A stretch of 64,000 nucleotides of DNA from Octopus sinensis (GCF_006345805.1 NC_043020.1:20956001-21020000); one strand, 5' to 3'; shown: positions 14,393-61,910, counted from the stretch's first letter. Notes: a model not told the origin generated them from the sequence alone. Numbers and translations are program-made.

Positions 14393-14505
14393 TAATTATT
14401 ATTATTATTATTATTATTATTATGTTTTTTTCCTTCTTTTTTCAAATTTTCCTTCATTTCTCACCGAGTGTTTTCCATACACCTAGGGCAGAGAAGCTCA
14501 TTGTC
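14393..14505 (-). mobile_element. Very short Dong 3' UTR copy with (TAA)n tail
   Basis: 14420-14503 is the reverse complement of the 3' end of the copy ending at 17368 (TGAGCTTCTCTGCCCTAGGTGTATGGAAAACACTCGG..). Confidence 0.85.
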
Positions 14506-14526: not shown

Positions 14527-14538
14527 ATAATAATAATG

Positions 14539-14578
<40 letters not shown>

Positions 14579-15480
14579 CCATGATAAAACGATGGCAAGA
14601 AAAGCCCCTTCATGGTAAATACTGGACTAAACTAAACGCAAAAGAAATAGACAAAGAAAAATCCCAGCAATGGTTGAGAAGCTCAGGACACAAAGCAGAA
14701 ACAGAGGGATTTTTAATTGCAGCACAAGACCAAAGCCTCCCCACCAGAAATTACCAAAAACATGTAATGAAAAGAAATATTACAAGTAACTGCAGAATAT
14801 GTGGAGATGGACAAGAAACAATAAATCATATTATCTCTAGCTGCCCAGTTCTGGCTAAGAAGGAATATATTCACAGACATGACAGAGTTGGAACCTACAT
14901 ACATTGGAAGCTATGCCAACATTATGGAATAACAACAGAAAAAAGATGGTATAGGCACACACCAGAAAAGGTCACAGAAAACGAGAAAGCAACCATACTC
15001 TGGGATATGCCGATACACACAGATAGAGAAATTAAGGCCAACAGACCAGATATAGCTGTCAGAGATCATGAAGAAAAAAAATGCTTTCTAATTGATGTAT
15101 CAATACCGGCAGATGACAACGTGTCTCTAAAAGAAATGGAGAAGCTCTCAAAATACAAAGACCTGGAAATAGAGGTAACTAGAATGTGGAATCTGAAAAC
15201 AGAAACAATTTCTATCATAGTAGGTGCATTAGGCATGATAAAAAAATATTCAGACAAATACATAACAAAAACACCAGGACTTACAAACACATATAACATA
15301 CAGAAAATTGCACTATTAGGCACTGCACACATCCTACGCAGAACACTTTCCATACAATAACCATCAGAGCATCACAACAAATCACAGCACATACCCAAGG
15401 CACACAGAGCTGCGCTCGGTAGTGAAGTGAAAGCACGCTATAAAAATAAAACTACTGAATAATAATAATAATAATCATCA
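14527..15480 (+). mobile_element. R4/Dong copy 5, 5'-truncated, flanked by (TAA)n on both sides
   Basis: Uninterrupted 14536-15360 frame (WQEKPLHG, CRICGDGQETINHIISSC, NRPDIAV, KYKDLEIE); the poly-Ile N-terminus is only the upstream microsatellite. Confidence 0.92.
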
Positions 15481-15996: not shown

Positions 15997-17368
15997 CATA
16001 TAATAAGGTGTTAGCCATAAATTCCTTTGCAGTACCAGTTGTTCTTTATAGCTTCAATGTGCTTAACTGGAATACCAGTGAAATAATGAAAATAGACAGA
16101 AAAATCCACAAGCTACTGACTTGTAATAAGATGCACCACCCAAAGGCAGACGTGGATCGCCTTTACCTTCCCAGAGCTCAGGGAGGTCGAGGTTTGATCC
16201 AGCTTGAACTTACATACAAAACCACCACAATCGGACTGGCCAAATACCTTGAAGCAACCAACGATTGGATGCTAAAACTTGTTGAAAAACATGAAAGACT
16301 TCACTCTATTCTCAAAGAGAGCAAAAAATTCGCTGCTGATCTCTTAGTTACCCACCAGATTGATCAGGCTGAAGGAAATGCGCCAACTGCAGCTGCAAAG
16401 AAAATAAAATTAATTGCAAAGACAAAAGCACATAAAATTTTAGCTAGCAGATAGGAACAGAAACCTCTCCATGGCAATTATGTGGCCCGTAGCAAACAAG
16501 CTGATGTCGACCAGAAACACACACACCAATGGTTACGAACCTCAGGGCTAAAAGCAGAGAGTGAAAGTTTCATATTAGCTGCTCAAGACCAAAGCTTATT
16601 AACCTGGAACTACCAAGCCAATGTGATAAAAAATGGAACTGACCCAAAATGCCGATTCTGTAACAATGAGATTGAAACAATAGACCACCTAATCTCAGGG
16701 TGTAGAGTCTTAGCACCTGCAGAATATAAAGCAAGACATGACAGAGTCGGCCAGTCTTTACATTGGACAATATGTCAGTATTATAAAATCAAAAGCGCTG
16801 ACAAATGGTATAAACACCATCCTGAAGCTGTGACTGAGGGAGAAAATGTGTCGATTCTATGGGACTTCCCCGTACAGACCAGCAAGACTATAAAAGCTAA
16901 TAAACCTGATATTATTATAAAAGATCAGACAAAAAAGACGTGTTTATTAATTGACATGAGTATCCCTTGCGATCACAATATAGTGGTGAAAGAATTTGAC
17001 AAGATTAGTAAATATAAAGACCCTGCTAATAGAAATTGAAAAAATGTGGCATCTCAAGGCGACTACGGTACCAGTGATTGTAGGATCTCTAGGAATGATA
17101 AAAAAGGTACTGAAACCTATTTGAAAATGATTCCAGGCTTACTATCCTTACAGGAAGTGCAAAAAATCGTATTAACAGGAAGAACATTATCGCTGTGAAA
17201 ACAACATCCATCCATGAATTTATTTATTTATTAATTTTTAAATACATATTTTATCTGTGAATTTGTGTGTGTAATCTGGGAATGCATACAATGAGCTTCT
17301 CTGCCCTAGGTGTATGGAAAACACTCGGCGAGAAATGAAGGAAAATTTGAAGAAAGAAGGAAAAAAAC

Positions 17369-17410
<42 letters not shown>
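15963..17410 (+). mobile_element. R4/Dong copy 6, 5'-truncated, flanked by (TAA)n on both sides
   Basis: HHPKADVDRLYLPRAQGGRGL, CRFCNNEIETIDHLISGC, NKPDIII, KYKD; 3' UTR followed by (TAA)n at 17369-17410. Confidence 0.9.
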
Positions 17411-20051: not shown

Positions 20052-20084
<33 letters not shown>

Positions 20085-20085
<1 letters not shown>

Positions 20086-20767
20086 AAAGGATAAGATCGT
20101 TAATTTAAAATAAAACAACGAACTTATCAAGTGGTCAGCATGGAAAAAATAACCTTCAAAGGTAATAATTATTAAAATTATAAATTAGGGAATCTACGAG
20201 ATACTACCATGCTGAAAATAGCAGCCATGAACCGACTCTAAAACCACCTTAAGTTTTCATATAGCAACATGGAGAAAAGACAAAGAGACAAGATGAAACT
20301 AGTAAAAGTTTACTGGATAATTCTAGATCCCGGATTTCTGACTTTGCATTTAGAAATGCTTTTCCTTGTCACTCAGAAAGAAACATAAATACATATATAT
20401 ATAAATACAACATACGAATACTTACATATACGAACGTATACATACATATATATGCACGTATGCATCAAGGCTAGTTCAAAATGCCCGCTAATTCCATGTG
20501 CTATTTGGTAAAATAGAGTCGGTTCATGGCTGCTATTTTCAACATGGTGGTATCTCGGGGATAGCCTAATATATAATTTTAATAATTATTACCTTTGAAG
20601 ATTATTTTTTCCATGCTGACCACTTGATAAGTTCGTTGTTTTATTTTAAATTAACGATCTTATCCTTATTTATATAAATTTAAATTTATTTCGTCATTGT
20701 ATTTACTGCGGTGATATTTTACCATATAGCACATGGAATTAGCGGGTATTTTGAACTAGCCTTGATT
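20085..20767. repeat. Nested inverted repeats
   Basis: ~20085-20243 is inverted at ~20514-20670; ~20463-20514 is inverted at ~20716-20767. Confidence 0.85.
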
Positions 20768-20779
20768 CATACGTGCATA

Positions 20780-21060
<281 letters not shown>

Positions 21061-21067
<7 letters not shown>

Positions 21068-21176
21068 GAGAAAAGAAGCAACAAAAATGGATTAGTTTTT
21101 AGTACAATTGTTTCATACAGATGAAACAATTGTACTAAAAACTAATCCATTCTTGTTGCTTCTTTTCTCGTTTATA
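21061..21176. repeat. Palindrome, 56 bp arms (1 mismatch), 4 nt spacer ACAG
   Basis: Arms 21061-21116 and 21121-21176; each begins internally with ATGAAACAATTGTA (HHR 3' half). Confidence 0.95.
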
Positions 21177-21273
21177 ATCACCCCACACTACTGTATTGGT
21201 TAACACCATATAGTTTCCTGGTGCATCTAAATTAAATGAATTCATTAGAATTGACTTGAATCTTAATTGTTTA

Positions 21274-21330
<57 letters not shown>

Positions 21331-21561
21331 AATATATATATATCAAGGAGAAACAAGCAGTATTAAATCTCTGAGTGAGATGTAAACAGTAGCAATATGG
21401 AATTGTAACATATAATTGCCAACATATAAGTGTAACATATAAGTGTGGCGTCCTATACGGGACAGTGCTACTGGCGTTTATAACCCCAGGAAGACATCTC
21501 TCTCCTCCAGCTGGCTAACGACACACATTCTGCGTCCGATTAGTATTAGTCTTATGTGATA

Positions 21562-22685: not shown

Positions 22686-22880
22686 CCAGAGCTTATGACA
22701 AATGTTTCTGTCGGTACACCCATCCAGGGCCAGGAGAGTCAAGAAAGAACACACAGTACAAATTGAACCAAAAATTAAACTAAATCAATCATCTGTTAAG
22801 CAACCCAAATGGAAAACAACGAAAATGAGCAAATGCATGAATACATACTAACAAACCTTTATGTTCAATATTACTCTATT

Positions 22881-23504
22881 GTGAAAGCGGTGAGCTGGCA
22901 GAAACGTTAGCACGCCGGGCGAAATGCTTAGCGGTATTTCGCCTGCCGTTACGTTCTGAGTTCAAATTCTGCCGAGGTCGACTTTGCCTTTCATCCTTCC
23001 GGGGTCGATAAATTAAGTACCATTCACGCACTGGGGTCGATGTAATCGATTTAATCCGTTTGTCTGTCCTTATTTGTCCTCTCTGTGTTTAGCCCCTTGT
23101 GGGTAGCAAAGAAATAGAAATAGGTATTTCGTCTGCCGCTACGTTCTGAGTTCAAATTCCGCCGAGGTCGACTTAGCCTTTCATCCATTCGAGGTCGATT
23201 AAATCAGTACCAGTTACGCACTGGGGTTGATGTAATCGCCTTAATCCCTTTGTCTGTCTCCTCTATGTTTAGCCCCTAGTGGGCAATAAAGAAATAAGAA
23301 ACGTTAGCATACCGAGTAAAATGTTTAGCGGCATTTCGTTCGTCTTTACGTTCTGAGTTTAAATTCTACCGAGGTTGACTTTGCCTTTCATCCTTTCGGG
23401 GTCGATAAAATAAATACCAGTTGAATACTGGGGTCGATATAATCAACTTACTCCCTAACCCAAACTTGCTGGCCTTGTGCTAAAATTTGAAACCAGTATT
23501 ATTC
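22881..23504 (+). mobile_element. Trimeric tRNA-derived SINE family B with 12 bp TSD
   Basis: Three units of GTTCAAATT..GAGGTCGAC..GGGGTCGATAAATTAAGTACC; TATTACTCTATT at 22869-22880 and 23505-23516. Confidence 0.85.
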
Positions 23505-26289: not shown

Positions 26290-29132
26290 CGTGTCCTGTA
26301 AGGTGAAGAATGCATTTTTGTGTAGTTGGTGTTTTGATGAGTGGAGGTGGTGCTGGTGGGGGTGAGAGTGTTTGTGGAATAATGGGTGTGTCAGCAAGTG
26401 GCACAAATGTGTCGGAAACAAGCTTTTTTTATTCTGTCGATAGAGACAGTCTCTTTTTTTCCGTGAATGTCCACAGCGAACAGTTTCAGCGTGCTTCTAA
26501 GAACGTGATAGGATCCAGTGTAGAGAGGTGTGAGCGGTCCCTTGACGGCATCATTTCTTACAAGCACGTGGGTCCAAGTAGAAATATATGGAGTTACTGT
26601 AGAAAAAATAGACTGGTGGCAGGTCAGCAAAGAATGACCTGAGTCGTGTGACGTAAGATGTGGTGTCCGCATTCGGTGAGTCGACGGGTGCCAACATTTG
26701 TCCAGGAAGTGCTAAAGTGGTACCATACAGGAGCTCAGCGGAGGAGTAGCCTAAATCTCCCTTGACAGCTGAGCAGCACCCCTGCAGGACAATGGGGAGA
26801 AAGTTGGACCAAAGATGAGGGTCAGGAGCCGTGCGAATAGCGGCTTTGAGCTGGTGGTGGAATCTTCCTACCATTCCGTTCGCGTCGGGATGGTAAATTG
26901 TGGTGTGGATGTGCTGAACTTCGAGCAATCTCGAAGACTCACGGAACAGATAAGCTTCAAATCGGCGTCCACGATCAGTAGTAATTCTAGAGGGTACTCC
27001 AAAGCGAGATATCCACCCGGATATGAGTGCTCTGGCGACTGTTTCCACGGAAATGTCCTCAAGAGGGATGGCTTCAGGCCATCTGGAGAAGCGGTTGATG
27101 CAGGTGAATATATAAGTAAATCCGCAACTGACCGGCTAAGGACCAACCAGGTCAATGTGAATGTGACGGAACCTGGTGTCCGTTGGCTGGAAGCATCCAA
27201 GAGGTGCTCTCACGTGACGATACACCTTGAAACGCTGACATGGCAGACAGGCACGTGACCAAGCAGTAATAGACCGACGCATATTCAGCCAGAAAAAGCG
27301 AGCCGAGATAAGTTTTACTGTGGCAGCTATGCCGGGGTGTGACAGTGAATGCAGTGCTTTAAAAACAGCACGACGGTGATGTTCAGGAACGAGGGGTCGT
27401 AGTGACCCGGTAGAAACATCGCAAAGAATAGTTCCTTCAGAAAACGGCAGAGGCAGGTATTCAAACTTGCCGCAGGAAAACTGTGGTGAAGAGACGTCCA
27501 GAGAGTCCAAGGAGGGTTGGGCAGTACCCATAGCAACCAAATTAATCGAAGCAGGAGACGACAGCGCACTGACAGGCAGGCGAGATACGGCATCGGCGGG
27601 ATGTTGTCAGTGCCAGCAATGTGGCGAATGTCACTAGTGAATTGTGATATGTAGTCCAAATGCTTTGTTTCTCTGGGTGAGTCTCGGTCCGTTTTGGCAA
27701 AGAGAGCGAACGTTAACGGTTTGTGGTCGGTGAAAATCGTGAAATCTCTACCTTCAAGAAGATGAGAGAAATGCTTTACTGCCAAGTAGATTGCTGTATC
27801 TCAATTCGGCATTTTTCAACTGGCGCGAAAAGAAGGCTAATGGCTGGCTTCGGCTGTTGACAGATTGCTCTAAAACTGCGGCAATAGCGGATGATTACAC
27901 GTTGTCAGTGAGTGTCAATTTTGCATCTGCAATAGGATGAGCGAGGAAGGATGCTTGAGCAAGGTCAGCTTTGAGAGATTCAAAAGCTTGGATGGATGTA
28001 GGAGACAGCGTTATCGAGGAGTCTTTTTTCCGTTGATCTTTCAAGAGCCAAGTCAAGGGAAGCAACTTCTCTGCGCAGTTAAAATGAAACGACGATAATA
28101 ATTAATTAAACTAATAAAATTTCTGAGCTATTTTAATGAAACAGGAGACAAGCGCTTGATGGCTTCCACTTTAGAGGGAAGCGTCGGCGTCATGAAATGC
28201 CCCAAGAATTCCAAGCTGGTAAAACCGAATACACACTTGGATTGATCTTCACATCATAGGAACATAGGCGCTTGAAGAGTTGGGTTAAGTATTGGAGGTG
28301 CTGATCTGGAGTACCACTGGCGATTAGAAGGTCATCGACAAAATGTAACCCACGGACGACCTCACCAATGAACCTTTGGAACGTGCTGGCCGCATTACAA
28401 AGGCCAAACGGCATAGACATTACGAAGACCAAACGGCTGTCTTTGGAATGTCGTCGGGGTTGACAGGGATTTTGTGGTACGCGCGTACTTAGTCGATTTT
28501 AGAAAAATCTTACAGCCGTGCAGGGCAGACGAAAAATTCTGCATATTTGGTTGGGGATAGCGATCTGCAATAGTGAGTGTTAAGACATCTAAAATCTCCA
28601 GCTGATCGAAAATCAGCTTCATTATTCCTGGTCATGTGTAAAGGTGCTGCCCACGGGCTCGTGAAGGGACGAATAAGGCCCAGCTGGAGCATGTGCTCGA
28701 ATTCAGCCCGGGCGATCCGGAGTTTTATCTGGAGACAACTGGTGTGGTCGGAAAAAAAACTGGAGGCCCCTTAGTCGTGATGAAATGTCTCGTGGAATGG
28801 ACTGAATTCGACGAATGAAATGACAAGTCAGTCAACTCTGGAAACGAAGCGAGTAACTGATGGTAGGCGTCACCCGAAGCAGCCACGATGAAGGAAGAGC
28901 TCACGAAAGGGACAGTAGAATCCTTTCCGGAGATGGCGAGTGAATTGGTGTCATCAATAAGTCGGCGTCCTCTAACGTCCACAAGGAGAGAATAGTGATG
29001 TAAGAAATCAGCACCAAGAATGCGATAGGGCAGGTCTACAATGACGAAGATCCACTTGAAATTCCTACGGATTGATAAATTCAGGGTAGGAGAGATTTGT
29101 CTGTAGATTTTGATGGCGAAATGATTCACCGC

Positions 29133-29223
<91 letters not shown>

Positions 29224-29960
29224 TCGGAAAGACCAAGATTGGTGGATGTAAACCTTCGGGGCCAAATGCTTACGCTGGCACCGGTGTCCACTATAAAGGA
29301 CTTTGAAGAATTAACATCTCGGATAAAAAATGCACGGTAAGGTGAATCAGTGCGGGAGACAACTGACGTGCCCAGCGCTCCCCTGCCGAGTTTCCCTGAA
29401 AAGAGTAAGAGCAGAGCTGTATACACCTTTCGGCTTGGTCCTTGAATTTCCTATGGTATCAGCAAATTGATGGAATAGGAAGTGCGCGTGCGCACGAGAA
29501 GTAGCGGCGTCTGGTCCTCCCTGCAGAATTATCCCATGAAGACGAACAGTTCCTGCACAAGCGTGAAACTTGACGGGTCAGTTCTCCACTAGCCCGCAAG
29601 ATTTCGGAGGATTGCGTGTCGTCCGGAGCAGAAGAATCACAAGCTCGAGTGGAGGACGAAGAAGCGCATTGAGGCAAAGGAAAAGGACTCATCTTGACGA
29701 TACTAGGAAAACGGAACGCCACGAAGAACAAGCTGGTTGAAGGAAACGCCTTTAGAAATAGCAGTCAAACACCCTAGTTGAAAGAAGACACGAGCATCAA
29801 ACTAGGATTTTTTTTAGTAGCAGAGGGTAAAATAGAAGTCTTTGCCAACGGATGAAGAACAAAACATGGCCAACACGTGAATAATCCGGGTAGGGTTGAG
29901 AGAAAGAAACTCATACCTGGCACGTAGGAAAAGTTGTTATCCATGTGAATTCTGAACAAA
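26290..29960 (-). pseudogene. Gypsy gag-pol, multiply frameshifted
   Basis: gag C*YHRKFKDQAERC; protease FIVDTGAS; RT SPWAAPLH, MPFGLCNAASTFQR, FVDDLLI; RH FTIFTDHKPL; IN HSLSHPG..CLPCQ, HIDLVGP, ITTDRG, ANGMVGRFH. Confidence 0.93.
29135..29220. repeat. (AG)n microsatellite inside Gypsy protease region
   Basis: Directly visible; yields an in-frame (SL)n run in ORF 28725-29426. Confidence 0.95.
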
Positions 29961-30708
29961 ATTTCGAGTATTTTTTTAACGTCATTTTACATGCAAGAAA
30001 ATTCTCCTGGGACTCTGTGTCTTTCAGTAAATTCAGTTACAACATGAGGAAAAATGATTTGCCGCGCCCGCTTGAAAATGGCGCCAAAATTTTCTGGTGA
30101 AGATGACAATATGGCGACGAGAGAGATCAGTGGTATGTTCCTATACGATGAATGGCGGTCTGGTCGCGTAGACGAAGTCGAGGAGAAAAAGGAATACGTA
30201 TCCATTGGTCAGAAATTCGTCCGAGATTCACCATTTTAGAAGGAATGGATCTTTTCCTTTTGATAGCCAGATTTCAACACAATTTCTAGTTAACTAAACA
30301 CTTTAAAACTTCGTATACTGGTAGAATGTGTCAAAAGAAAACATTATTTTCACTTGGCTTTTTTGATAAATTTGTAATTCGTTTGTTTAACGTAGTTTAA
30401 TTTTTCGAATTTTAACCAATCCTATGCTCTCTTTTGAGCTGAAATCATTTGCTGCGTCTAAAAACTGAGACAACATCTGTTTTGTTCGTAATATAGCGTT
30501 CGTGAGTTCGATATCAGGCTAACCTACCGGCCCCACGGTGGGATTTTTTTCTTTACGATTATTAGTAAATTTTTTCTTTACGATCATTAGTAAATTCACA
30601 TTTATTTATCAATATCGATAACGAATTACTGCCATTGTTTAGACCGGCCCCAGTACGTAACTGGTACTTAATTTATCTGGTACTTAATTTAACTGGTACT
30701 TAATTTAT

Positions 30709-30967
30709 CCCTAACTCTAACCCTAACCCTAACCCTAACCCTAAACCTAACCCTAACCCTAACCCCTAAACCCAACCCTAAACCTAACCCCTAACCCTAA
30801 ACCTAACCCTAACCCCTAACCCTAACCCTAACCCTAAACCTAACCCCTAACCCTGAACCTAACCCCTAACCAAAGCTAGCGACCGATGCCGGAAGGCTGT
30901 CACGAGATAGGGTTAGGGTTAGGGGTTAAGCTTAGGGTTAGGTTTAGGGTTAGGGTTAGGGTTAGGG
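30709..30967. repeat. Interstitial telomeric cassette: (CCCTAA)n 30709-30871, 36 bp spacer, (TTAGGG)n 30908-30967
   Basis: Directly visible, with variant units; flanked by inverted SINE-B segments. Confidence 0.95.
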
Positions 30968-31170
30968 ATAAATTAAGTACCAGTTACGCACGCACGCACT
31001 GGTGTCGATAGAATCGACTTAATACTTTTGTCTCTCATGCTTTGTCCCCTCTGTGTTTTGCCCCTTGCTGGAACAAATTTACACAAAAGGTAAATAAACC
31101 AGAAATGGGGGATCAATGTTTCATCGTTTCGGGGTCGATAAATTAAGTACCAATTACGCACTGGTGTCGA
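30968..31170 (+). mobile_element. SINE family B fragments (an inverted piece also lies at ~30650-30708)
   Basis: GATAAATTAAGTACCAGTTACGCA..GTCGAT shared with 22881-23504. Confidence 0.75.
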
Positions 31171-31754
31171 GGATTTTTTCCTCAATTTATATCACAGCCT
31201 CCGACAAGCTGGGGCATCCTTTTATGAAAAAATATTTCGCAAATTTTTACAATACGACCCACCTCCACGCACCCTCATATCCCACTCTAGACCGATTTAG
31301 GCATATTATTGTTTTGTTTTTGTTGTTTTTAGCCCTTCAAAACCATGGGAGAAGCCTTTTCGGTAAAAAAAAATAAAGAAAATATTCAAAAAATATCGTT
31401 AATATTTTTATTGGGCGACGAAATTCATCGATTTAAGAGATATGGCTGTTGTTTCTAGCACATGCCAACACAACCCTCCTCGTTTGTTTATCAATATCGA
31501 TAACGCAGCAAATGATTTCAGCTCAAAAGCGAGCATAGGATTGGTTAAAATTCGAAAAATTAAATTACGTTAAACAAACGAATTACAAATTTATCAAAAA
31601 AGCCAAGTGAAAGAAATCTGGCTATCAAAAGGAAAAGATCCCGGGGGGAAGTTTTAAAGTGCTTAGTTTACTAGAAATTGTGTTGAAATCTGGCTATCAA
31701 AAGGAAAAGATCCGAAGGAATTGTGGTGTGTGCTGCGTCGAGTCGCCACTTAGA

Positions 31755-33483: not shown

Positions 33484-33524
<41 letters not shown>

Positions 33525-33526
<2 letters not shown>

Positions 33527-33732
33527 AAAGTACAGAAGCCATCTTAACATGGCTAACCACATAGGGGAGGGGGTGTTACTGTAGCTTTATAGCCCCGGGA
33601 GATGTGGTTAGCCATGTTAAGATGGCTTCAGTAACACCCCCTCCCCTATGTGGTTAGCCATGTTAAGATGGCTTCTATACTTTACATTATCGAGCGATTA
33701 CTGTTTCAATCTCATTCTGAGATTTAATAATG

Positions 33733-49796: not shown

Positions 49797-50010
49797 TGGT
49801 TTCAAATTTTGACACAAAGTCAGTAAGTTCGGGAGAGGAGGTAAGTTGATTACACCGATTCCAAAGTTCAACTGGTACTTATTTTATCGACCTCAAAAGA
49901 ATGGAAGGCAAAGTCGACCTTGTCTGAATTTGAACTCAGAACGCAAAGACAGACGAAATGCCGCTAAACATTTTGTGCGGAGTGCTAACGATTCTGCCAG
50001 ATCACAGACT
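49797..50010 (-). mobile_element. SINE family B
   Basis: Reverse complement contains TGGCAGAATCGTTAG, GAGTTCAAATT and GGTCGATAAAATAAGTACCAG. Confidence 0.8.
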
Positions 50011-50466
50011 TAAAGTAACTAGCAATATGTAAGTAATGTCAATGACCCAGGTTTTATTTTATTGATTTCTGATGACATTCTTCTCTTTCTCTTCGTTCTT
50101 TTTCGATTTTCTATTCGTGCCAGGAGATGACTTCAATTCATTCTTGACCCATCCTTAATGTCGCCTTTCCTAAATTTCTCCATACAATTTCGTTTTTCGT
50201 TATATATTCTTTCTTTCCAACAGATGTTAACGACCTTATGTAAAGTTAGCTTCAAGTAGCTTATCTTGCTTTCAAGAGAGCAACGATGTCTGAGTAAACA
50301 GAAACACACTTAAACCCTCTTAAATTGTGACACGAATAAACCAATTTCCAGGGAATTATTACACAGGAAACTGGATCCTGTTAAGTCATCCGCTACTAAG
50401 GGCTTTTCATTTTAAAGAAGTATTTGAAAGAGAAGCCAGCTAGATGGAGCCCAACTCTCAGAAATG

Positions 50467-60764: not shown

Positions 60765-60835
60765 ATATATATATAAAACATTATTGGTGAATTGAAGAAA
60801 TGGAGCTGAACGCAGATTGAACAGAAATCGTTTTA

Positions 60836-60924
60836 TTTCATTCTACACGTGTTTCGAAAGGCACAAATTACCAAAATCCGATTGAATAATGGGACCATAT
60901 TGTGTCTTTCTCTTCAGGAAGAAA
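60836..60924 (-). ncRNA. Type I hammerhead ribozyme (mirror copy)
   Basis: Reverse complement of 61101-61189. Confidence 0.8.
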
Positions 60925-61100
60925 AAAGGAAATCCGTTGGAAAAACAAAAACAGAACAGAGGCGGAGCAAAAACAAATCGAACTATGCTCCTAAGAGCCC
61001 ATGGCGAAACAAGAGTTTCGCCATGGGCTCTTAGGAGCATAGTTCGATTTGTTTTTGCTCCGCCTCTGTTCTGTTTTTGTTTTTCCAACGGATTTCCTTT

Positions 61101-61189
61101 TTTCTTCCTGAAGAGAAAGACACAATATGGTCCCATTATTCAATCGGATTTTGGTAATTTGTGCCTTTCGAAACACGTGTAGAATGAAA
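61101..61189 (+). ncRNA. Type I hammerhead ribozyme with intact catalytic core
   Basis: TTTCTTC-CTGAAGA-GAAAGACACAA..TTGTGCCTTTC-GAAAC-ACGTGT-A-GAATGAAA: stem II 10/11 pairs, palindromic stem III ACACGTGT, predicted cleavage after A61181. Confidence 0.8.
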
Positions 61190-61418
61190 TAAAACGATTT
61201 CTGTTCAATCTGCGTTCAGCTCCATTTCTTCAATTCACCAATAATGTTTTAATTTCAATTATCCGCACCAACGCACGGTTGCAACGCCAGATGGTTGTAC
61301 CTCCAACCGTGCTGTTTACTGCTGTGATTTTTGCTACTAAGGTATCGGTTAAACTTTTGATTAATCTACCACAAGATTATTCATCTTTCTATTTCACATA
61401 ATATATATATATATATAT

Positions 61419-61910
61419 AAGCATTAATAAATCTCCGAACGAGATATAAACAGTAACCGCTCGACAACGTAAAGTGTACTAGCCATCTGAATGTGGCTAG
61501 CCACTGGGGGTGGGTGTTACTGACGCTTTTAGCCCCAGGAGATCGACGTCTCCAGCTGGCCTTAGACACAATTTCAGTGCCCTAGTGTTATTTGCAAAAG
61601 GAGGTCATCCTCCCTCGAAAACCTAAGTGATACATACGGACTATAGTTTACCATACGTTGACGAGAGGCAAAAACCTTGTAACTATAGTCCGTATGTATC
61701 ACTTAGGTTTTCGAGGGAGGATGACCTCCCTTTGCAAATAACACAAGGGCACTGAAATTGTGTCTAAGGCCAGCTGGAGACGTCGATCTCCTGGGGCTAA
61801 AAGCGTCAGTAACACCCACCCCCAGTGGCTAGCCACATTCAGATGGCTAGTACACTTTACGTTGTCGAGCGGTTACTGTTTATATCTCGTTCGGAGATTT
61901 ATTAATGCTT
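61419..61910. repeat. Near-perfect palindrome, 230 bp arms (2 mismatches seen), 32 nt spacer
   Basis: Arms 61419-61648 and 61681-61910; same family as 21345-22270. Confidence 0.95.
61652..61696 (+). ncRNA. Hammerhead-like motif occupying the palindrome spacer (C3U, A13U)
   Basis: CATACG-TTGACGA-GAGG(CAAAAA)CCTT-GTAAC-TATA-GTC-CGTATG; stem I perfect, stem III palindrome ACTATAGT. Confidence 0.7.

What the first reader, a model, noticed from the sequence alone, without database searches (positions are those of the whole stretch)
30650..30995. Outward-facing telomeric cassette around a 36 bp orphan, joined to the same SINE position on both sides
Seen: (CCCTAA)n, then AAAGCTAGCGACCGATGCCGGAAGGCTGTCACGAGA, then (TTAGGG)n. 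Both arrays join GATAAATTAAGTACCAGTTACG in inverted orientation, and the left side has three tandem copies of CTGGTACTTAATTT. Known: end-to-end fusions give the opposite order (TTAGGG then CCCTAA). Inference: this looks like a tiny fragment telomere-capped at both ends and captured in a break, or a telomerase-RNA-templated/fold-back repair product. The spacer could derive from telomerase RNA or subtelomere.
Basis: partly seen in the sequence, partly recalled or inferred. Interest (0 to 1): 0.7.

Follow-up and report, generated by a model that had tools for sequence, protein, structure and literature searches.

The report
Folded-back telomere-repeat scar inside a SINE
The outward-facing telomere repeats are real, but they are best read as a short telomere-repeat insertion into one SINE that was later partly copied back on itself, all inside a small DNA transposon: an unusual-looking but essentially ordinary DNA-repair scar.

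Summary
A (CCCTAA)n array (30709-30871), a 36-bp spacer (30872-30907) and a (TTAGGG)n array (30908-30967) are present. Both arrays abut GATAAATTAAGTACCAGTTACG in inverted orientation, and a 16-bp SINE piece is triplicated on the left.

The spacer is not an orphan. Its central 20 nt (30880-30899, reverse complement) are SINE positions ~133-148, ending exactly at the base before the join point (anchored shuffle test 94/20000). Read on the minus strand, the left half is SINE 133-148, then 8 nt of filler, then (TTAGGG)n, then SINE 149-191. That is a clean telomeric insertion into one SINE, of the class described for mammalian double-strand-break repair.

The right arm is an inverted copy of only the array plus 22 nt of SINE. 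Beyond that it continues in a different SINE copy. This fits a fold-back (snap-back) inverted duplication, the mechanism proposed for "outward" telomere fusions in ALT cancers.

The whole structure lies inside a 1467-bp element (30247-31713) with 211-bp terminal inverted repeats and an 8-bp target-site duplication. A 23-bp direct repeat brackets the 859 bp around the cassette.

The doubly capped mini-fragment reading is not supported. Copy number, read support and the empty allele could not be tested, because no host genome was reachable.

The parts
30239..30246 (.). Left copy of the 8-bp target-site duplication GAAGGAAT of the enclosing transposon
   Evidence: identical 8-mers directly outside both terminal inverted repeats
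30247..30457 (+). Left terminal inverted repeat (about 211 bp) of a non-autonomous DNA transposon
   Evidence: blocks 97% complementary to 31503-31713; both termini read GGATCTTTTCC
30458..30600 (.). Internal segment U1 of the transposon, unique in the window, including a 25-bp tandem repeat x2 (30545-30596)
30601..30623 (+). Left copy of a 23-bp direct repeat (TTTATTTATCAATATCGATAACG) bracketing the 859-bp block that holds the cassette
   Evidence: 22/23 identical to 31483-31505; 0 of 300 shuffles give such a repeat
30634..30677 (-). SINE fragment, about positions 149-191, on the minus strand; left flank of the telomeric insertion
30661..30709 (-). Three tandem copies of a 16-bp SINE piece (ATAAATTAAGTACCAG in SINE sense), left arm only
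30709..30871 (-). Telomeric array, (CCCTAA)n on the plus strand and (TTAGGG)n in the sense of the interrupted SINE; about 27 units with 25/55-bp higher-order periodicity
30872..30879 (-). 8 nt AAAGCTAG (CTAGCTTT in SINE sense): filler between SINE position 148 and the array; origin unknown
   Evidence: no match elsewhere in the window
30880..30899 (-). SINE positions about 133-148 on the minus strand (CAGCCTTCCGG[CATC]GGTCG), ending exactly at the base before the join point
   Evidence: 15/16 plus a 4-nt insertion; anchored shuffle test 94/20000; colinear alignment with five SINE copies
30900..30907 (.). 8 nt TCACGAGA at the inversion junction; origin unknown
30908..30967 (+). Right telomeric array (TTAGGG) of about 10 units; inverted copy of the SINE-proximal part of the left array
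   Evidence: (93.5% over 77 bp, anchored at the SINE)
30967..31077 (+). SINE positions 148-251 in sense. The first 22 nt are identical to the left arm; the rest belongs to a different SINE copy (GGTGTCGA variant)
31119..31170 (+). Uninterrupted SINE fragment (positions about 130-181) with no telomeric insertion; serves as an in-locus 'empty site' comparison
31173..31482 (.). Internal segment U3, unique in the window; origin unknown
   Evidence: its 86-aa ORF has no relatives
31483..31505 (+). Right copy of the 23-bp direct repeat, abutting the right terminal inverted repeat
31503..31713 (-). Right terminal inverted repeat; its terminal 29-mer is duplicated (31613-31641 and 31685-31713)
31714..31721 (.). 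Right copy of the 8-bp target-site duplication GAAGGAAT

Best explanation
I infer three nested events.

1. A non-autonomous DNA transposon with long terminal inverted repeats inserted here and made an 8-bp target-site duplication. This is shown by the sequence.

2. In one SINE copy, lying on the minus strand, a double-strand break between SINE positions 148 and 149 was sealed with 8 extra nucleotides plus a run of TTAGGG repeats. This is a short interstitial telomeric sequence of the kind attributed to telomerase acting at breaks. The insertion itself is shown by colinearity with other SINE copies; the role of telomerase is inferred.

3. A later break or stalled synthesis near SINE position 132/133 left a 3' end on the strand carrying (CCCTAA)n. 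That end folded back on its own array and was extended, copying the array and the first ~22 nt of the SINE in inverted orientation. The new strand was then captured through homology with a second, oppositely oriented SINE copy. This step is inferred.

The result is CCCTAA array, then a 36-bp loop (8 nt filler + 20 nt SINE + 8 nt), then TTAGGG array, with both arrays appearing to join the same SINE base. The extra length of the left array and the 16-bp triplication are later or concurrent slippage.

The 23-bp direct repeat around the 859-bp block suggests that serial template switching, or a staggered-break insertion, placed the whole patchwork into the transposon's interior.

No function is implied. 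If transcribed, the locus would form a long hairpin.
For: - Structure and coordinates.
- The arms are inverted copies: the best alignment is the one anchored at the SINE junction (93.5% over 77 bp), and the variant units occur in the same order counted from the junction (a3-b-a-x-c).
- The spacer's central 20 nt equal SINE 133-148 in the orientation of the left arm, ending exactly at the join. Shuffle tests gave 94/20000 anchored and 315/20000 unanchored. The joined flanks align colinearly with five SINE copies, none of which carries the insertion.
- Arm homology stops after 22 identical nt. After that the arms match at roughly half of the aligned positions (my count from the alignment) and differ by an 8-nt indel. 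The right arm shares the GGTGTCGA variant with the neighbouring fragment at 31119-31170.
- Terminal inverted repeats and the 8-bp target-site duplication. The 23-bp direct repeat was matched in 0 of 300 shuffles.
- Literature on telomeric insertions at breaks: they occur with no flank change (16-23%) or with added random nucleotides, and insertions inside repeats are judged against the repeat consensus (PMC2246262).
- Literature on fold-back: a (CCCTAA)n 3' end folding back gives the outward order (PMC10762111). Fold-back inverted duplications at breaks, with the second end captured or resolved by homology, are documented in yeast (PMC11724301, PMC7467729).
Against: - The SINE match of the spacer is short, needs a 4-nt gap, and was noticed post hoc.
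- Telomeric arrays align to each other at 85-92% at many offsets, so the 'mirrored variant order' is only modestly better than the alternatives.
- No microhomology that would prime the fold-back could be identified.
- 16 of the 36 spacer nucleotides and the 23-bp direct repeat are not explained in detail.
- The left SINE fragment is truncated at about position 191, so the original SINE is no longer intact.
- There are no reads, no second haplotype, no orthologous or paralogous copy, and no host identification. Every external search came back empty or spurious.
Confidence: 0.6

Rival explanations
1. The cassette is a fixed internal part of a multi-copy repeat. Either the enclosing transposon amplified after acquiring it, or a SINE subfamily with an internal (TTAGGG)n at position 148/149 amplified and the two arms are separate copies of it. 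This concerns history and copy number. It is compatible with the fold-back origin of the first copy.
For: The cassette lies inside an element with terminal inverted repeats and a target-site duplication, so the unit is potentially mobile. In SINE terms both arms have the same configuration (array, then position 149). The genome carries other palindromic MITE-like elements.
Against: There is no second copy of the inverted repeats, of U1/U3 or of the cassette in the 64-kb window. Five other SINE copies in the window lack the insertion. ORFs across the inverted repeats, U3 and the junction have no relatives in the protein collections. These are weak negatives, because the host genome could not be searched.
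Confidence: 0.25
2. Reverse-transcriptase product. A chimeric RNA (a telomeric-repeat RNA such as TERRA joined to a SINE RNA by template switching) was inserted by target-primed reverse transcription. Twin priming or snap-back second-strand synthesis gave the inverted 5' part, and the 23-bp direct repeat is the target-site duplication.
For: A 23-bp direct repeat brackets the 859-bp block. The block is rich in SINE fragments. On the left arm the plus strand reads as a cDNA of the SINE followed by a cDNA of UUAGGG repeats. The 16-bp triplication looks like template jumping.
Against: No poly(A) or SINE tail lies next to either copy of the direct repeat, and 310 bp of unrelated U3 lie at the 3' side. 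Twin priming joins adjacent RNA segments rather than duplicating 80-100 nt. The SINE sequence 133-148 upstream of the array shows an insertion into a SINE rather than a 5' junction of a truncated SINE RNA.
Confidence: 0.1
3. One reading: a 36-bp DNA fragment received telomeric repeats from telomerase at both 3' ends and was then captured in a break.
For: The order CCCTAA, unique sequence, TTAGGG is that of a linear molecule with two telomeres.
Against: Both distal ends join the same SINE base in mirror orientation, and the arrays share variant order counted from that end. Twenty of the 36 nt are the SINE sequence that precedes the join. Independent capping predicts none of this.
Confidence: 0.03
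4. Assembly artefact: a chimeric or fold-back long read, or a collapsed repeat.
For: Palindromes are a known artefact class. The window holds two other perfect palindromes. No reads were available.
Against: The arms are short (about 80 bp), unequal (163 vs 60 bp of repeats) and diverged by substitutions and indels. The structure has biological logic: SINE continuity across the insertion, and an intact transposon with a target-site duplication around it. There are no Ns. The centre does not resemble long-read adapter sequences as I recall them; this was not checked with a tool.
Confidence: 0.05

Closest known systems
Short interstitial telomeric sequences inserted at double-strand breaks (Nergadze et al., Genome Biol 2007, PMC2246262; also PMC7215372)
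   Same: A short (TTAGGG)n run interrupts an otherwise continuous sequence, here a repeat, with no loss of flanking bases and a few added nucleotides. The insertion is judged against the repeat consensus, as those authors did.
   Different: Here the insertion was subsequently duplicated in inverted orientation. The host is not a mammal (it is unidentified). Telomerase involvement and in-register microhomology could not be assessed.
Outward telomere fusions in ALT tumours (Muyas et al., Nat Commun 2024, PMC10762111)
   Same: The order is 5'-(CCCTAA)n ... (TTAGGG)n-3' with a non-telomeric junction longer than 12 bp (their 'alternative' class). The proposed origin is fold-back of a (CCCTAA)n 3' end after a break.
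   Different: Those events are somatic, sit on small telomeric fragments and are tied to ALT. This one is in an assembled chromosome, inside a SINE and a transposon. It involves an internal array of about 60-160 bp, and its arms extend into unique (SINE) sequence.
Fold-back inversions and templated inverted insertions at breaks (PMC7467729, PMC11724301)
   Same: An inverted duplication with a unique loop, with resolution of the second end by homology or end joining.
   Different: The yeast events range from 5-34 bp local insertions to chromosome-scale rearrangements. Here the arms are about 80 bp plus later expansion, and no priming microhomology could be seen.
Fusion-type interstitial telomeric sequences (e.g. 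human 2q13; review PMC6410037)
   Same: Two telomeric arrays in opposite orientation at an internal site.
   Different: The order is opposite (TTAGGG then CCCTAA), so this locus is not of that type.
TERC-ITS loci of rodents (PMC2246262)
   Same: A non-telomeric stretch lies directly 5' of (TTAGGG)n at a repaired break.
   Different: In the rodent loci 31-118 nt are homologous to the 3' domain of telomerase RNA. Here 20 of the 36 nt are SINE, and only 8 nt next to each array remain unassigned.
MITE-like non-autonomous DNA transposons with filler DNA from abortive gap repair (from my own knowledge of Ac/Ds and hAT elements, not from a paper read here)
   Same: Long terminal inverted repeats, an 8-bp target-site duplication, no coding capacity, and an interior made of unrelated patches bounded by short direct repeats.
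   Different: The superfamily was not established (the termini GGATC... are not the usual hAT motif). Copy number is unknown.

Membership tests
Short ITS inserted at a double-strand break | Short internal run of the telomeric hexamer | tested here: met
   It was not verified that TTAGGG is the host's own telomere motif, because the host is unidentified.
Short ITS inserted at a double-strand break | The run interrupts a sequence that is continuous in the empty locus or in the repeat consensus | tested here: met
   SINE 133-148 and 149-191 flank the left array; five SINE copies are uninterrupted; anchored shuffle test 94/20000.
Short ITS inserted at a double-strand break | Break-end nucleotides in register with the repeats (the telomerase signature) | tested here: inconclusive
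   An 8-nt filler (CTAGCTTT) lies between SINE position 148 and the first repeat, so register cannot be judged.
Outward telomere fusion / fold-back inversion | 5'-CCCTAA...TTAGGG-3' order with the arms being inverted copies of each other | tested here: met
Outward telomere fusion / fold-back inversion | Somatic, ALT-associated, on small telomeric fragments | not testable with these tools
   Only an assembled sequence is available. The locus is embedded in chromosomal repeats, which argues against a free fragment.
Outward telomere fusion / fold-back inversion | Microhomology at the fold-back priming site | tested here: inconclusive
   No convincing priming microhomology at 30900-30912. The arrays have changed length since the event.
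End-to-end fusion ITS | TTAGGG array followed by CCCTAA array | tested here: not met
   the order is the opposite.
TERC-ITS | Flanking stretch homologous to the host's telomerase RNA | not testable with these tools
   The host TERC is unavailable. No Rfam telomerase RNA match. Twenty of the 36 nt are assigned to the SINE.
Non-autonomous DNA transposon (MITE-like; 8-bp TSD class such as hAT) | Terminal inverted repeats flanked by a target-site duplication of fixed length | tested here: met
   211-bp inverted repeats and GAAGGAAT on both sides.
Non-autonomous DNA transposon (MITE-like; 8-bp TSD class such as hAT) | Multiple dispersed copies, and a related autonomous element or superfamily-specific termini | not testable with these tools
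   No other copy in the window or in the protein collections. The host genome is not searchable. The termini GGATC are not diagnostic.
LINE-mediated twin-priming insertion | Target-site duplication with the element's 3' tail next to it, and the inverted part contiguous with (not duplicating) the sense part | tested here: not met
   A 23-bp direct repeat is present, but there is no tail at either end, and about 80 nt are duplicated in inverted orientation.

The most novel reading that the evidence does not exclude
A germline-fixed 'outward' telomeric fold-back, a signature so far reported as a somatic mark of ALT tumours, formed at an internal telomeric array in an invertebrate-like genome and sitting inside a potentially mobile transposon. 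If it recurs genome-wide, it would show that interstitial telomeric arrays are fold-back hot spots in normal germlines, or that a mobile element spreads telomeric hairpins. Such hairpins could be sources of small RNAs against telomeric transcripts, or seeds for chromosome healing.
Probability: 0.1. Interest if true: 0.55.

Novelty: new variant of a known kind. Interest (0 to 1): 0.3.

Why it matters
The locus records, in one place, two repair processes that are usually studied separately: the sealing of a break with telomeric repeats, and fold-back inverted duplication. It shows that the outward telomeric configuration known from ALT cancers can also become fixed in a germline genome.

In practical terms, outward-facing telomeric arrays in assemblies need not mean captured mini-chromosomes or misassemblies. 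Comparing the "orphan" centre with the flanking repeat's consensus can resolve them.

As a single locus without population or copy-number data, its wider significance is limited.

Tried and rejected
**External copies or an empty allele**
- A junction 20-mer searched in metagenome contigs gave one chance hit in a bacterial contig.
- The spacer and the SINE core gave no match in bacterial/archaeal genomes or in viral contigs.
- Exact look-ups of 11 window ORFs found nothing in the collection.
- Homology searches with the U3 ORF and with a three-sequence alignment of ORFs spanning the inverted repeats (including the joined-flank 'empty site') gave no hits.
- A representative-library search with the ORF crossing spacer, array and SINE gave one spurious repetitive protein.

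**Origin of the spacer**
- No match elsewhere in the window, in Rfam, or in the full text of papers.

**Host identity**
- The best relatives of a window retroelement ORF are unnamed contigs (Logan SRR7158634, 90%; GCA_024449705.1, 80%).
- The accessions are not mentioned in the paper library, and SINE k-mers are not in papers.
- My impression that the SINE looks cephalopod-like rests on memory only and is unverified.

**Readings rejected**
- A large simple palindrome from 30247 to 31713: the interiors of the two halves do not match.
- U3 as a SINE head.
- The sub-threshold Rfam MIR869 hit: an effect of the telomeric hairpin, 50 bits against a 330-bit cut-off.
- Bacterial-type promoter and terminator scans: uninformative.

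Full report

Yes. Reading 30000-31700 and running Tandem Repeats Finder show the following:
- a 16-bp unit repeated 3.1 times (30661-30709);
- a (CCCTAA)n array at 30709-30871;
- the 36-bp sequence AAAGCTAGCGACCGATGCCGGAAGGCTGTCACGAGA at 30872-30907;
- a (TTAGGG)n array at 30908-30967.

The 22-mer GATAAATTAAGTACCAGTTACG occurs without mismatch on the minus strand at 30656-30677 and on the plus strand at 30967-30988, each directly against an array. Telomeric 18-mers occur nowhere else in the 64 kb, and the 36-mer is unique in the window. The window has no Ns and is 38.6% G+C. As single-stranded DNA, 30634-31010 folds into one long hairpin (z = -9.4).

**2. The flanking repeat is a SINE-like element**

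Other copies lie at 22860-23115, 23123-23295 and 23297-23454 (a tandem cluster) and at 49842-50028 on the minus strand. I judge the orientation from a B-box-like GAGTTCAAATTC in the 5' part, read by eye; ARAGORN and Rfam call no tRNA.

Using the 22860-23115 copy as the numbering reference:
- the right arm is SINE 148-251 (30967-31077);
- the left arm is SINE about 148-191 in reverse (30634-30677);
- a third, uninterrupted fragment covers 130-181 (31119-31170).

**3. The spacer is not an orphan**

A low-stringency search showed that the spacer resembles, in reverse complement, the SINE bases that immediately precede the join point. The reverse complement of 30880-30899 is CAGCCTTCCGG-CATC-GGTCG. 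The SINE has CATCCTTCCGG-GGTCG, followed by ATAAATTAAG. That is 15 of 16 matches plus a 4-nt insertion, and the match ends exactly at the last base before the join.

In 20000 shuffles of the spacer, 315 reached this score against the 30 nt upstream of the join in four SINE copies. Only 94 did so while also reaching the end of that stretch. When the two flanks of the left array are joined, they align colinearly with five SINE copies, none of which has the insertion.

Read on the minus strand, the left half is therefore: SINE 133-148, then CTAGCTTT, then (TTAGGG) of about 27 units, then SINE 149-191. This is a clean insertion of telomeric repeats plus 8 extra nucleotides into one SINE.

It matches the class of short interstitial telomeric sequences that Nergadze et al. 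ascribed to telomerase acting at double-strand breaks. In their data 16-23% of loci showed no flank change and 16-17% showed added nucleotides, and insertions within repeats were judged against the repeat consensus (PMC2246262). The match was noticed post hoc and is short, so I rate this step well supported rather than proven.

**4. The right arm is an inverted partial copy**

The best alignment between the arrays is the one anchored at the SINE junction (93.5% over 77 bp). Counted from the junction, both arrays show the same order of variants: three canonical units, the CCCTAAACCTAA variant, a canonical unit, one more unit, then the 7-mer CCCCTAA. Other offsets give 85-92%, so this evidence is modest. 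The identical join base on both sides is the stronger argument for common descent.

Homology between the arms ends quickly. There are 22 identical SINE bases, then an 8-nt indel and matches at only about half of the aligned positions, by my count. The right arm shares the variant GGTGTCGA with the neighbouring fragment at 31119-31170, whereas the left arm has GGGGCCGG. So the duplicated tract is the array plus about 22 nt, and the right arm then continues in a different SINE copy.

**5. Mechanism (inferred)**

A 3' end on the strand carrying (CCCTAA)n, created by a break or stalled synthesis near SINE position 132/133, folded back onto its own array. It was extended through the array and into the SINE. 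The nascent strand was then captured by homology with a second, oppositely oriented SINE copy.

This leaves filler + SINE 133-148 + 8 nt as the 36-bp loop, and makes both arrays appear to join the same SINE base.

The same logic is proposed for 'outward' telomere fusions in ALT tumours, where a (CCCTAA)n 3' fold-back gives 5'-CCCTAA...TTAGGG-3' and junctions longer than 12 bp form an 'alternative' class (PMC10762111). Fold-back inverted duplications at breaks are documented in yeast. Local ones arise through synthesis primed at microhomologies, with the other end captured by end joining (PMC11724301). Larger fold-back inversions are resolved by secondary rearrangements that are mostly mediated by homologous recombination, including single-strand annealing (PMC7467729).

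I could not find a priming microhomology. The left array is about 100 bp longer than the right (three units of about 55 bp), and only the left arm has the 16-bp triplication. I attribute both to slippage during or after the event.

**6. Context**

The cassette lies inside a 1467-bp element, 30247-31713. It has terminal inverted repeats of about 211 bp (97% in blocks; the right one carries a duplicated terminal 29-mer) and an identical 8-bp direct repeat, GAAGGAAT, immediately outside both ends. This is a non-autonomous DNA transposon with a target-site duplication. There are no ORFs of note. The superfamily is unresolved; 8 bp is the size made by hAT and a few other superfamilies (from my own knowledge).

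Inside the element, a 23-bp direct repeat (22/23 identical; 0 of 300 shuffles) brackets 859 bp. That block contains the cassette, the SINE pieces and 310 bp of unknown origin, and the right copy of the repeat abuts the right inverted repeat. It looks like either a long target-site duplication or the footprint of leaving and re-entering a template. I cannot decide which.

The window also holds two perfect palindromic MITE-like elements, so hairpin-shaped mobile elements are common in this genome.

**7. Rivals**

- **Doubly capped mini-fragment.** It predicts independent arrays and arbitrary outer joins. The data show the opposite (sections 3 and 4).
- **Reverse-transcriptase origin** (TERRA-SINE chimera with twin priming or snap-back). 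It would use the 23-bp repeat as a target-site duplication. However, there is no 3' tail at either end, about 80 nt are duplicated rather than contiguous, and SINE sequence lies upstream of the array.
- **Assembly artefact.** Unlikely, because the arms are short, unequal and diverged, and the structure is embedded in an intact transposon. Only reads can exclude it.
- **Multi-copy repeat.** The unit is potentially mobile, but I found no second copy in the window or through any protein-level route.

**8. What could not be done**

No eukaryotic genome collection was reachable. DNA pattern scans of metagenomic, viral and prokaryotic collections were empty or gave chance matches. The host was not identified. 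Telomerase involvement, the origin of the two 8-nt pieces, copy number, read support and the empty allele are therefore untested.

**9. Verdict**

- The locus is a new variant of known kinds: an interstitial telomeric insertion, followed by a fold-back inverted duplication, nested in a MITE-like transposon.
- Interest is modest.

Noticed in passing
window 60774-61251: A perfect palindrome (237-nt arms, 100% complementary, 4-nt centre) set in a (TA)n tract. It looks like a fold-back MITE and gives identical 97-aa ORFs on both strands.
   Followed up: partly
window 61419-61910: A second near-perfect palindrome (230-nt arms, 99%, 32-nt loop), also next to (TA)n and unrelated in sequence to the first.
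   Followed up: partly
window 33524-33686: A small hairpin (62-nt arms, 97% complementary, 39-nt loop) between (TA)n/(TG)n tracts.
   Followed up: no
window 22860-23454: Three SINE units in head-to-tail tandem, the second and third 5'-truncated (starting at positions 74 and 41). This SINE tends to occur in partial tandem clusters.
   Followed up: partly
window 23453-23465: The third SINE unit has a different 3' region containing CCCTAACCCAAAC, a telomere-like C-strand motif. It is at a different SINE position from the insertion studied here.
   Followed up: no
window 26551-29426 (minus strand): A degraded LTR-type retroelement (integrase zinc-binding domain, weak integrase-core hit, RNase H fragment). 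An upstream ORF is interrupted by an (AG)43 microsatellite at 29135-29221.
   Followed up: partly
window 14395-14504 and 17288-17397: A 110-nt inverted repeat pair (98%) bracketing about 2.8 kb that holds ORFs of the reverse-transcriptase zinc-binding type (274 aa at 14536-15360; best relatives are unnamed contigs at 80-90%).
   Followed up: no
window 20065-21343: A dense nest of inverted repeats (up to 176 nt, 92%) around long (TA)n-like tracts.
   Followed up: no
window 30523-30552: A G+C-rich stem (CCTACCGGCCCCACGGTGGG) followed by T7 inside transposon segment U1, just before a 25-bp tandem repeat. It looks like a terminator, but its meaning in a eukaryotic repeat is unknown.
   Followed up: no
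window 30766-30977 (minus strand): A sub-threshold Rfam match to the plant miRNA precursor family MIR869 (50 bits against a 330-bit cut-off). It is an effect of the telomeric hairpin, not a homologue.
   Followed up: yes
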